Origin: Hamiltosporidium tvaerminnensis FI-OER-3-3
Taxonomy: Eukaryota > Fungi > Microsporidia
Direction: 5' to 3'
Length of the DNA: 64,000 nt
Assembly: GCA_022605425.2 (NCBI GenBank)
Contig: JAKIMF020000007.1
Span: 1,054,001-1,118,000 of the forward strand
Positions 16,229 through 18,420 of this stretch are shown in pieces (positions within the stretch are counted from its first letter, which is position 1; every line of letters starts with the position of its first letter). A model generated the notes under the pieces. The model worked only from the letters and a program-made list of their open reading frames with translations, searched no databases and was not told the origin of the DNA. The position numbers were made by a program, and so were the translations under genes.

Positions 16229-17692
16229 GAGATAAATTAGATGTATATGTTTATTCGATTATGTACAAAAAGACATTCAAGCTCATTTCTTATGATAGAC
16301 GAATGAATTTGGTTCATCACCAAAAACCTAGTACGGTTTGTAAGAGCATCATTAAATTCCATAGTGAGCCGAAAGATCAGATCAACTTATATTTTTTTAT
16401 AAAATATTTACCAAAGTGAGAAAGTATTAAGACAGTAAAGAAGCAAAATATAAGATCGTTTATTTAGAAGTAAGATCATCGAAAAAGATCTAACCAAAAA
16501 TTGCATATCTTCTTAGTCTATTATAGTAAAAAATATCAAATTTATGTAAAAACTATCTATAATGTTAAGAAAAAGACAAAATACTTAACTCGACATTTAA
16601 AAAAATCTACAATCAATTTCTTCTAAACATATATTTAAAGAAATAGTAGATCCGCTTATAAGGTTGCACTAATATACAATTTTTTAATTTATCTAATAAT
16701 TTTTAATTTAATTTTTTACCAATAATATTAGATTAAATATTTTTTAATTTATCTAATAATTTTAATATTATTTTTTCAAATCATTTTGCTACCAATAATA
16801 GTAGATTTGATATTTTTTAAGATAAATCATTAAATATATTGGCTGAAACGACAATAAAGTATCAATAAGATATGTAAGAATAATTTTAAGTAGAATATTA
16901 TATTTTGTTTGTATGAAAAGAAATAAGTTCAAATTTACTTTTTAATTTTAAATTGGGTAAAAAAGAATATAATCGTAACACATTTTAGGCCTAAAATGAT
17001 TTTTTTTAGATTCAAATATTTTAATGGTTAACATGGTGATTCAAATTTTAAACTTTGAATTTTATTTGATAAAAATCACATCATTTTATAAATATAATAA
17101 ATATTATATTATTCTTATGTATTAATCAGATCATGGTAATAGATAGATAACTGCACTCTAACATTCGAATTACCTCATACGATACCTATATATCAAAGAT
17201 TTTCAAATAAACGGTATGTAGAGCTCATTTTTTAGGTGAAATCGGTTCCTTTGATTCATAAATATTCTTTTGCCGTAGTCTGACTGAATATTGATTACCC
17301 TCAGACTGACACAATACCAGTACCACGCCGAGTTACTCTGCACTTTCAGGGCTAAATAACTTTCACCTAAAATATATGTAAGCGGCTCACATGAGTTCAT
17401 TTAGATATTGAGATTCTATACCAACAAATACAGCCATCTACTTAGCTTTCTTGTCTTTTTAATTAGGTGTGTTTTTTTTGCATCACCAGGTTCATGTTCG
17501 TTATAGGCGAGCAAGTAAGACTAGAGTTTCCATGTTTTAGCATAGTAATCACCTACAGGCTTGGTTGTGGTTTCCAATCTAGTTACATTGTAATCTATAA
17601 AATAATTTTATAAAAAAATTGCCTGCTTCGTAGATGTTTTCATTCTTAAAGATTCCATTAATACAACCAACAAAAACGCCGTGTTATTTTTA

Positions 17693-17882
17693 CGAATCTA
17701 AATGGCGCTACAGCTCTTAAAGAGCCCGAGCGGAAGACACTTTTTTTCTAATTTTCTTATTTCGTTTCAATTTGTATCAATATGGTTTGTAACAAAGGCG
17801 GTTTAGAGTTATGCCCAATACTCCTCTTTTATCCGGGCTTGAAACCGACAGAGCAGAACTCATCGTATCTCTGGCAGAGTCT
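17693..17882 (-). mobile_element. 190-bp RTE-type SINE with a twister-ribozyme 5' end
   Basis: The 3' end GGGCTCTTTAAGAGCTGTAGCGCCA (hairpin + CTGTAGCGCCA) is typical of RTE termini. Imperfect TSD GTGTTATTTTTA (17681-17692) / GTGTTTTTTA (17883-17892). Confidence 0.7.
17815..17882 (-). ncRNA. Degenerate type-P1 twister ribozyme (3' cleavage-product portion)
   Basis: The sense strand reads AGACUCUGCC-AGAG..CUCU-GUCGGUUUCAAGCCCGGAUAAAAGAGGAGUA. It matches 26/32 to the canonical twister core as recalled (UGCCGGUCCCAAGCCCGGAUAAAAGUGGAGGG). P2 (CUCU/AGAG), P3 (AGAG/CUCU) and P4 (UCG/CGG) can form; pseudoknot T1 is mutated. Confidence 0.7.
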
Positions 17883-17970
17883 GTGTTTTTTATACTCCCA
17901 AAAAGTAAACAATGTATTTTTCGCAAATTTTTTGTTTTATTCTCCATCCTTCACCAAAGATTAAAAAAAC

Positions 17971-18143
17971 AAAAAATAGACTCTAAATATAAGAAAAAAG
18001 TAAATTTAGTATAAAAAAATAAGTTTCTCTACTCAAATACATTTTTATAATCAAAAAATAGACTCTAAATATAATAAAAAAGTAAATTTAGTATAAAACA
18101 ATAAGTTTCTCTACTCAAATACATTTTTATAATCAAAAAATAG
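17971..18143. repeat. 82-bp tandem duplication (~2.1 copies)
   Basis: The unit AAAAAATAGACTCTAAATAT...CATTTTTATAATC starts at 17971 and 18053. Confidence 0.9.
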
Positions 18144-18420
18144 AAAAATAGCAAAAATAAACTACAATTTTTTTAATAAATTATTAACTAACAGAGATAC
18201 TAGTAAAACCAAGCCATTTAAATTGATTAAAAAAATAATTTCAAAATTATTTATTTCCCCAAATAAATCATTTTTCTTGGGATAAAATTTCCTTTTAAAA
18301 ACCAAAAAATCTCTGTTTTATAATAAATATATTTCTCTTTTAAGTAAATTCTTTCAAAATAAATTTATAATCAAACAAAACTTCCTAGAAATAAATATTC
18401 TAAATTTAACTTCAAATTCT

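What the first reader, a model, noticed from the sequence alone, without database searches (positions are those of the whole stretch)
17693..17882. Twister-ribozyme SINE whose 5' end sits at the self-cleavage site, nested in the 720-nt element
Seen: a 190-bp insertion splits one copy of the structured element and has an RTE-type 3' end and an imperfect TSD. Its 5' end begins (A)GACUCUGCC followed by a twister core, with a compensatory P2 (CUCU/AGAG rather than CACU/AGUG). Known: twister cleaves U^A just before the A-P2 strand, and twisters occur at the 5' ends of some RTE elements. Inference: the upstream P1 strand is absent because the reverse-transcribed RNA was the ribozyme's 3' cleavage product. 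This copy has T1 mutations (GUUUC, GAGUA) and is probably inactive. I am not aware of twister SINEs described from microsporidia; arthropod-host origin is plausible.
Basis: partly seen in the sequence, partly recalled or inferred. Interest (0 to 1): 0.8.

Follow-up and report, generated by a model that had tools for sequence, protein, structure and literature searches.

The report
Twister-capped mini retrotransposon in a microsporidian
This 190-bp insertion is an old, dead copy of a short retrotransposon whose first base lies where a twister self-cleaving ribozyme would cut; it is a deletion derivative of a 3-kb LINE with the same ribozyme, an arrangement so far published only for a schistosome LINE.

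Summary

- **The element.** Window 17693-17882 (minus strand) is a 190-nt retroposed element. It is flanked by a 12-bp target-site duplication (10 of 12 identical) and sits inside a diverged copy of a ~730-nt repeat.
- **The ribozyme.** Its first 66 nt match Rfam twister-P1 at 43.3 bits, with E 2.6e-7 for the whole 21.6-Mb genome. This is below the curated cut-off of 67.2, mainly because helix P1 is missing.
- **The family.** A family model finds 49 such ribozymes in this microsporidian genome (relatives are named Hamiltosporidium). About 28 head ~185-nt elements. About 21 head degenerate ~3.07-kb endonuclease/reverse-transcriptase LINEs of RTE-like layout.
- **Origin of the short element.** It equals the LINE's 5' UTR plus its last ~45 nt (a hairpin and a (GTA)n tail). 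It is therefore an internally deleted LINE, not a Pol III SINE.
- **The 5' end.** Across 32 copies, conservation starts exactly at the predicted cleavage site. Duplications end within -4 to +1 nt of it in 12 of 14 cases.
- **Age.** Copies are ~82% identical to their consensus, and no LINE copy has an intact reading frame. Base pairs decay neutrally, so the family looks extinct.
- **Limits.** Cleavage itself was not tested. The one RNA run gave no reads.
- **Precedent.** The closest is the P1-less twister on Perere-3 in Schistosoma (PMC8501958). This is a new member of that kind.
- **Earlier notes.** First-stage notes had already flagged this family elsewhere in the same genome.

The parts
17693..17882 (-). 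Whole short non-autonomous element (190 nt): twister core, LINE 5'UTR remainder and LINE 3' module
   Evidence: 26 genomic relatives at 70-76% identity. Alignment of the copies. 79.6% identity to the family majority consensus of 185 nt.
17817..17882 (-). P1-less twister ribozyme core. The predicted scissile bond is between 17882 and 17881. P2 is 17879-17876 with 17827-17824. P3 is 17873-17869 with 17853-17849. P4 is 17848-17846 with 17835-17833. T2 is 17875-17874 with 17838-17837. T1 is 17843-17841 with 17821-17819 (one U.U mismatch).
   Evidence: Rfam twister-P1 43.3 bits, E 3.5e-8 and 2.6e-7 genome-wide. Family model R1 scores 82.8 bits (this copy was in the training set). Column mapping from A2.
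17741..17816 (-). Remainder of the LINE 5' UTR, which in the LINE lies between the ribozyme and the ORF start
   Evidence: Collinear with L028:563-643, the 5' UTR of the ~3.07-kb LINE. The LINE's ATG is at element position ~150.
17693..17740 (-). 3' module shared with the LINE: a hairpin (17706-17732, CGCU..GGCUCU-UUA-AGAGCU..AGCG), then GCGCCAUUUAG and a degraded tail. This is the presumed recognition site for the reverse transcriptase.
   Evidence: The same module ends LINE copies L026/L030, L028, L042 and L043 and all short copies, followed by (GTA)n. The hairpin appears in the MFE fold.
17883..17894 (.). Target-site duplication, copy next to the element's 5' end (+ strand GTGTTTTTTATA)
   Evidence: 10 of 12 identical to 17681-17692, read. 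It corresponds to the single site gtgtggttttat in intact copies of the host repeat.
17681..17692 (.). Target-site duplication, copy next to the element's 3' end (+ strand GTGTTATTTTTA)
   Evidence: Read. See the partner copy at 17883-17894.
17059..17954 (+). Old, diverged copy of the ~730-nt interspersed repeat that was split by the insertion (17059-17692 and 17895-17954)
   Evidence: BLAST core 17333-17618 at ~70% identity to copies elsewhere. Global alignment without the insert is collinear across the junction at 64% identity.

Best explanation
The feature is a fossil copy of a short internally deleted derivative of an RTE-like LINE. It resembles the SIDE elements of R2. Both the LINE and its short derivative begin with a twister ribozyme that lacks helix P1.

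**Proposed life cycle**
1. The element has no promoter of its own and is transcribed as part of a longer host or neighbouring transcript (inferred).
2. The twister core folds and cuts between the flanking nucleotide and the first A. This releases an RNA that starts A-A-CUCC-GCC (inferred from homology; not assayed here).
3. The LINE's endonuclease/reverse-transcriptase recognises the shared 3' hairpin and (GUA)n tail. It copies the RNA into a nicked AT-rich target by target-primed reverse transcription (inferred from the shared module).
4. Copying runs to the cleaved 5' end. Every full-length insertion therefore starts at the cleavage site and is flanked by an 8-17-bp duplication (shown).
5. 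Because the ribozyme needs nothing conserved upstream, each new copy is in principle cleavable again.

The short element kept only the two cis modules: the ribozyme-containing 5' UTR and the 3' terminal ~45 nt. It rode on the LINE's protein in trans.

The family is now extinct in this genome. The window copy carries a weakened T1 pseudoknot and is most likely inert.
For: **Ribozyme identity**
- Genome-wide Rfam twister-P1 search gave 31 matches at E<10, 14 of them at E<=0.01. Every one checked heads this repeat family (alignments).
- The 32-copy majority consensus reproduces the twister core: UAA, P2, GCC, P3, GC.GGUCCCAAGCCCGGAUAAA, P2', GAGGG.
- 77% of cells pair in register, against 41-47% when partners are slid.

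**Family size**
- Model R1 finds 49 hits at E<0.01.

**5' end at the cut**
- Relative entropy is <=0.14 at position -1 and at all but one position further upstream (0.32 at -12), and 0.86 at +1 and high thereafter.
- 12 of 14 duplications end at -4 to +1.
- The full-length LINE L028:500-3568 has its own duplication, TATATGTAACCA(A), at the same site.

**Partner LINE**
- 40 DNA matches, ~3.07 kb long.
- It is collinear with an intact 989-aa endonuclease + RVT_1 protein, P0014.
- The endonuclease piece has 3704 relatives and an Atlas score of 0.97 to Exo_endo_phos clusters.

**Shared ends**
- The deletion junction lies in an AAAATC microhomology just upstream of the LINE's ATG (read).

**Precedent**
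- Perere-3 T-variants cleave in vitro and in reporter constructs, and their duplications abut the cut (PMC8501958).
Against: - No copy reaches Rfam's gathering score (best 43.9 against 67.2).
- Self-cleavage was not assayed, and no RNA evidence exists: the one RNA run laid 0 reads, which is no test.
- Within the family, pairing and covariation do not exceed column shuffles. Structure is therefore supported by homology to twister, not by independent covariation.
- All LINE copies are degenerate (longest open stretch 184 aa), so activity cannot be shown.
- Pfam did not recognise the degenerate protein pieces directly.
- Assignment to the RTE clade rests on size, layout, C-terminal motif and hit names, not on a phylogeny.
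Confidence: 0.85

Rival explanations
1. The 5' end is set by transcription initiation (an internal promoter in the 5' UTR) or by some other processing. The twister-like sequence would then be a non-functional or differently used structure, for example an IRES-like or protein-binding fold, that merely sits at the start.
For: Cleavage was never observed here. Pairing in the copies decays neutrally. HDV-like ribozymes of R2 and L1Tc are also proposed to aid translation (review PMC6765202).
Against: The boundary of homology coincides to the nucleotide with the twister scissile bond. All catalytic-core positions are present in the consensus. The same layout was shown to cleave in Schistosoma. A transcription start would not explain why exactly the P1 5' strand is missing.
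Confidence: 0.07
2. The twister resemblance is a chance or convergent motif in a GC-richer repeat, and the element is an ordinary 5'-complete LINE derivative.
For: All scores are below Rfam's curated threshold. The same search produced sub-threshold matches in 10 of 14 control genomes.
Against: E is 1.7e-7 to 1e-3 for eleven independent copies in a 21.6-Mb genome, all at the same place in one family. Full-length model alignments (1-68) have both pseudoknot partners complementary.
Confidence: 0.03
3. It is a classical Pol III SINE, or a retrozyme-like circular-RNA element, that uses a twister.
For: Short length (~185 nt), high copy number relative to the LINE, and presence of a ribozyme.
Against: No tRNA-like head. 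The head is the LINE's own 5' UTR. There is a single ribozyme per unit, no terminal direct repeats and no tandem arrays. The duplications and (GTA)n tail are typical of target-primed reverse transcription.
Confidence: 0.03
4. The element is foreign (arthropod-host) DNA, either recently transferred or an assembly contaminant.
For: Relatives of the endonuclease include insect proteins (Rhodnius, Nilaparvata). The consensus GC is 45% against 26% for the genome.
Against: There are 49 copies spread over 16 of the 17 contigs of a genome with microsporidian rRNA. The copies are old (18% from consensus). The window copy is fixed in DNA contigs of three organism labels at 98-100% identity. The best relatives outside Hamiltosporidium are only ~45% identical. 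An ancient transfer cannot be excluded.
Confidence: 0.02

Closest known systems
T-variant twister ribozymes at the 5' end of Perere-3 / SR3 (RTE clade) in Schistosoma mansoni (Liu et al. 2021, PMC8501958; SR3: PMC1291365)
   Same: A P1-less twister sits at the extreme 5' end of a ~3.1-3.2-kb single-ORF endonuclease/RT LINE. The duplication lies directly next to the AA of the cleavage site. The 3' tail is a short-repeat microsatellite ((GTAA)n or (TAAG)n there, (GTA)n here). Insertion is not site-specific and favours AT-rich DNA.
   Different: The host is a microsporidian, not a flatworm. The family here is extinct and all ORFs are broken. A discrete, amplified ~185-nt ORF-less derivative (about 28 copies) is documented here, whereas the schistosome paper only notes ribozymes with no conserved domain downstream. 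Activity was shown there and not here.
R2 SIDEs (short internally deleted elements) with the R2 HDV-like ribozyme (Eickbush and Eickbush 2012, cited in PMC6765202)
   Same: A non-autonomous element made by internal deletion of the LINE. It keeps the 5' ribozyme and the 3' RT-binding end and is mobilised in trans.
   Different: The ribozyme class is HDV-like rather than twister. R2 is specific to rDNA sites and is co-transcribed with 28S, whereas this family inserts at dispersed sites.
L1Tc / NARTc of Trypanosoma cruzi, and HDV-like ribozymes on RTE and baggins elements (PMC6765202)
   Same: A 5'-terminal self-cleaving ribozyme frees a promoterless LINE and its short partner from read-through transcripts. 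The insertions are dispersed and carry ~12-bp duplications.
   Different: Different ribozyme fold. L1Tc has RNase H and a poly(A) tail.
Canonical type-P1 twister (Rfam RF03160; env22 and Osa-1-4 structures)
   Same: P2, P3 and P4, the T1 and T2 pseudoknots, and the conserved loops are all present.
   Different: There is no P1 helix, because the upstream strand is random flank. Scores therefore stay ~24 bits under the gathering cut-off.

Membership tests
Twister ribozyme, type P1 (RF03160) | Conserved core: UAA cleavage loop, P2, GCC, P4 with the GUCCCAAGCC loop, UAAA, GAGGG | tested here: met
   Full-length cmscan alignments 1-68. The majority consensus of 32 copies reproduces every block.
Twister ribozyme, type P1 (RF03160) | Pseudoknots T1 (CCC with GGG) and T2 (GC with GC) | tested here: met
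   77% (T1) and 88% (T2) of cells pair across 32 copies. In the window copy T2 is intact and T1 has 2 of 3 pairs.
Twister ribozyme, type P1 (RF03160) | Closing helix P1 | tested here: not met
   There is no conservation upstream of +1. cmscan marks non-standard P1 pairs in the copies whose alignments were shown. The same holds for the active schistosome T-variants.
Twister ribozyme, type P1 (RF03160) | Score at or above Rfam's gathering threshold (67.2 bits) | tested here: not met
   The best copies score 43.9, 43.3 and 41.3 bits.
Twister ribozyme, type P1 (RF03160) | Covariation supporting the helices | tested here: inconclusive
   Pairing equals the column-shuffle expectation (77.0 against 77.3%). 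This is expected for neutrally decaying dead copies.
Twister ribozyme, type P1 (RF03160) | Site-specific self-cleavage giving 2',3'-cyclic phosphate and 5'-OH ends | not testable with these tools
   The RNA run gave no reads.
Ribozyme-capped non-LTR retrotransposon (Perere-3 type) | Ribozyme cleavage site coincides with the element's 5' end and the duplication junction | tested here: met
   For the LINE L028.
Ribozyme-capped non-LTR retrotransposon (Perere-3 type) | Partner encodes an AP-endonuclease and a reverse transcriptase in one ORF | tested here: met
   tblastn of the intact relative P0014 (Exo_endo_phos + RVT_1) is collinear over L028, L041, L043 and L049. All copies carry stops.
RTE clade of LINEs | Placement inside the RTE clade in an RT phylogeny | not tested
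   Only indirect evidence is available: ~3.07 kb length, a single ORF, a microsatellite tail, the C-terminal ...RWLD..DL...W..AQDR motif, and hits named 'craniofacial development protein 2-like'.
SINE (Pol III-type) | Head derived from tRNA, 7SL or 5S with an internal promoter | tested here: not met
   ARAGORN finds nothing. Positions 1-146 are the LINE's 5' UTR.
SIDE-type internally deleted LINE | Both termini collinear with the autonomous element, and the ORF missing | tested here: met
   The 5' 146 nt and the 3' ~45 nt match the LINE. A second, independent deletion derivative of ~335 nt lies at L027:467-800.
Retrozyme / viroid-like circular RNA element | Two ribozyme copies in terminal repeats or tandem units that allow excision of a circle | tested here: not met
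   There is one ribozyme per unit, and the flanks are unique and bounded by duplications.

The most novel reading that the evidence does not exclude
The twister/RTE partnership would not be a schistosome peculiarity. It would be an old, possibly horizontally spreading module that also colonised Microsporidia. The amplified mini-element would be a natural deletion experiment showing that a P1-less twister 5' UTR plus a ~45-nt 3' hairpin and tail are the only cis requirements for mobilisation. That would define a minimal ribozyme-processed retrotransposition cassette.
Probability: 0.35. Interest if true: 0.6.

Novelty: new member of a known kind. Interest (0 to 1): 0.45.

Why it matters
The biological role of eukaryotic twisters has one published case, Perere-3 in Schistosoma. 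Finding the same architecture in a microsporidian extends that role to a second, very distant lineage. The shared features are the ribozyme at +1, a duplication at the cut, an RTE-like body and a microsatellite tail.

The ORF-less derivative kept the ribozyme. This argues that the ribozyme is needed in cis. That is the expectation if it frees promoterless elements from read-through transcripts.

The finding also explains why standard Rfam annotation misses these ribozymes: without P1 they score below the gathering threshold. It gives a ready covariance model for screening other microsporidia and their hosts.

The practical impact is modest, because the family is extinct in this genome.

Tried and rejected
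- **Rfam at gathering threshold on the window:** nothing. The hit appears only in E-value mode.
- **Pfam and PDB sequence search on degenerate LINE pieces:** no hits. Homology was recovered only through the Atlas, the exhaustive HMMER search and tblastn with an intact relative.
- **Intact RT ORFs elsewhere in the genome (L053-L056):** no tblastn hit at E<=1e-3 to the twister-LINE copies. They belong to other retroelement families.
- **Covariation test:** no excess over shuffles. I do not count the CUCU/AGAG P2 of this copy as compensatory evidence.
- **Expression and cleavage:** the one transcriptomic run laid 0 reads on 16900-18400, which is no test. DNA contigs only show that the insertion is fixed.
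- **Twister in four related 3.0-3.3-kb endonuclease/RT contigs from other samples (L058-L061):** none found with Rfam or R1. Their 5' ends may be incomplete.
- **Literature:** no paper joins twister with microsporidia, apart from an unrelated Rfam database paper. None describes a twister-bearing short non-LTR derivative.
- **Automatic search for a duplication around the window copy:** failed because of the two mismatches. It was found by reading the sequence.

Full report
**What is at the coordinates**

Read on the minus strand, window 17882 to 17693 begins A-G-A-CUCU-GCC. It continues through a sequence that cmscan aligns end to end with Rfam's type-P1 twister model. That hit is 17815-17886(-), 43.3 bits, E 3.5e-8 in a 700-nt scan and E 2.6e-7 against the whole 21.6-Mb genome. 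The score is below the curated gathering value of 67.2, so a threshold scan of the window reports nothing.

In this copy:
- P2 is CUCU with AGAG.
- P3 is CAGAG with CUCUG.
- P4 is UCG with CGG.
- The T2 pseudoknot (GC with GC) is intact.
- T1 reads UUC with GUA instead of CCC with GGG. That gives one retained C-G, one doubly changed U-A and one broken U.U.

The four model positions of P1 fall on flanking DNA, and two of them do not pair.

**It is an insertion, and it is nested**

On the plus strand, GTGTTATTTTTA (17681-17692) and GTGTTTTTTATA (17883-17894) flank the element and agree at 10 of 12 positions.

The surrounding DNA is a diverged copy of a ~730-nt interspersed repeat. That repeat gave more than 249 first-look candidates genome-wide, and its young copies are 94-95% identical to one another. 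When the 190 nt and one copy of the duplication are removed, the window aligns collinearly with an intact repeat across the junction and up to the repeat's end near 17954, at 64% identity. Intact repeats have a single gtgtggttttat at that place.

DNA contigs from three differently labelled organisms span the insertion at 98-100% identity. The insertion is therefore old and fixed.

**The family**

BLAST finds 26 relatives of the 190-nt element in the genome at 70-76% identity. Their alignment shows:
- a ~185-nt unit;
- a 5' end (T)AACTCCGCCAGAG...;
- a 3' end ...GGGCTCTTTAAGAGCTGTAGCGCCAATTA followed by (GTA)n;
- unrelated flanks.

I built a covariance model from 32 non-identical copies (A2, R1). 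It retrieves 49 instances at E<0.01. From the loci I fetched, about 28 head short elements and about 21 head LINE copies.

The short copies are on average 82% identical to their majority consensus, and the window copy 79.6%.

**The partner LINE**

Three 'relatives' shared only the first ~146 nt and then ran into coding-like sequence.

The best example is L028:500-3568, about 3.07 kb. It is flanked by its own duplication, TATATGTAACCA(A), and ends in the same hairpin/GTAGCGC/(GTA)n module. Forty DNA matches to it exist. All are riddled with stops, and the longest open stretch is 184 aa.

Pfam did not recognise the fragments. Other searches did:
- The 184-aa piece scores 0.97 to Exo_endo_phos clusters in the Atlas.
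- It has 3704 HMMER relatives. The second-ranked hit (75% identical; the top hit is this piece's own cluster) is named as a reverse transcriptase of Hamiltosporidium tvaerminnensis. Others are named 'craniofacial development protein 2-like' insect proteins.
- Intact relatives of 926-999 aa carry Exo_endo_phos plus RVT_1.
- One of them, P0014, aligns collinearly by tblastn over the endonuclease, RT and C-terminal regions of L028, L041, L043 and L049.

Size, the single ORF, the microsatellite tail and the C-terminal ...RWLD..DL...W..AQDR motif fit the RTE clade, to which Perere-3 and SR3 belong. I ran no phylogeny, so RTE membership remains an inference.

The genome is microsporidian. A 1303-nt SSU matches the microsporidian model end to end at 1208 bits and wins the clan competition.

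**How the short element relates to the LINE**

Its first ~146 nt are the LINE's complete 5' UTR; the LINE's ATG is at element position ~150. Its last ~45 nt are the LINE's 3' terminus. The junction lies in an AAAATC motif present at both LINE sites (read).

It has no tRNA-like head. It is therefore an internally deleted LINE, the same logic as the R2 SIDEs, rather than a Pol III SINE. A second, independent deletion derivative of ~335 nt exists at L027:467-800.

**Does the 5' end sit at the cleavage site?**

- In the 32-copy alignment the information content is at background level upstream. Relative entropy is <=0.14 at position -1 and at all but one position further upstream (0.32 at -12). It jumps to 0.86 at +1, the first A of the UAA loop, and stays high.
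- cmscan aligns the model's U|AA to flank|AACUCC in independent LINE heads.
- Among 14 short copies with a detectable duplication, 12 have it ending between -4 and +1 of the predicted bond. The +1 cases are ambiguous because the target also ends in A.
- In the window copy the duplication abuts A17882, one nucleotide upstream of the bond predicted by the model. Schistosome T-variants likewise vary in the number of A residues at the cleavage site.
- T at -1 is mildly enriched (56% against 35% in the flanks).

**What the structure tests do and do not show**

The named structure pairs in 77% of cells, against 41-47% when partners are slid. It does no better than column shuffles, and it shows no excess of double changes.

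This is what neutral decay of dead copies predicts. It means the CUCU/AGAG P2 of the window copy should not be read as selection. Support for the fold comes from homology to the twister family, not from independent covariation.

**Mechanism**

The most economical reading is the one demonstrated for Perere-3 in Schistosoma mansoni. There, P1-less twister variants at the LINE's 5' end cleave in vitro and in reporter constructs, and duplications lie next to the AA of the cut (PMC8501958).

Here the shown steps are:
- the ribozyme homology;
- its position at +1;
- the duplications;
- the shared 5' and 3' modules.

The inferred steps are:
- co-transcription;
- self-cleavage;
- recognition of the 3' hairpin and tail by the RT;
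- trans-mobilisation of the short element.

No RNA evidence could be obtained. The one transcriptomic run laid no reads.

**Novelty**

No paper in the searchable library links twister to microsporidia or describes a twister-bearing short non-LTR derivative. Four related endonuclease/RT elements from other samples show no twister, though their 5' ends may be incomplete.

The finding is a new member of a known kind: the second lineage with twister-capped RTE-like LINEs, plus a SIDE-like derivative. First-stage notes of this scan had already flagged the same family on other pieces of this genome. Those notes agree with what I tested here.

The arthropod-origin idea is neither supported nor excluded. 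The nearest relatives outside Hamiltosporidium are only ~34-46% identical in the endonuclease.

Noticed in passing
window 17970-18144: An 82-bp unit is tandemly duplicated (2.1 copies, 97% identical) just beyond the end of the host repeat.
   Followed up: partly
window 17059-17954; L032, L034-L040: A ~730-nt interspersed repeat gave more than 249 first-look candidates genome-wide. Its young subfamily is 94-95% identical, and the window copy belongs to a much older layer at 64-70% identity. No coding capacity was examined.
   Followed up: partly
L068 (G000:C15:992650-993650); L063 (G000:C11:239900-240900): A twister-LINE 5' fragment is cut off by an inverted copy of the ~730-nt repeat. A short twister element is split by an unrelated ~180-nt insertion. 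Nesting therefore goes both ways.
   Followed up: no
G000 genome-wide (e.g. C13:59462-60142, C1:621414-622157): There are at least 150 RVT_1 matches, many inside intact ORFs of ~850-1300 aa. Other retroelement families therefore look young or active, and the four sampled ORFs gave no tblastn hit to the twister-LINE copies.
   Followed up: partly
L022/L023 (C12:551k and 505k); L018/L019/L020; L008/L013: Several copies share their flanks as well (98% identity between the C12 pair, in inverted orientation). These are segmental duplications, not separate insertions.
   Followed up: no
A1 column 16 (position -1 of 32 copies): T is at -1 in 56% of copies, against 35% T in the flanks. This may reflect target preference or a bias for cleavable insertions.
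   Followed up: no
L027:467-800 (G000:C15:230266-230600): A second, independent internal-deletion derivative of the twister-LINE (~335 nt). It retains the first ~75 nt of the endonuclease ORF and has its own duplication, TTATGGA.
   Followed up: partly
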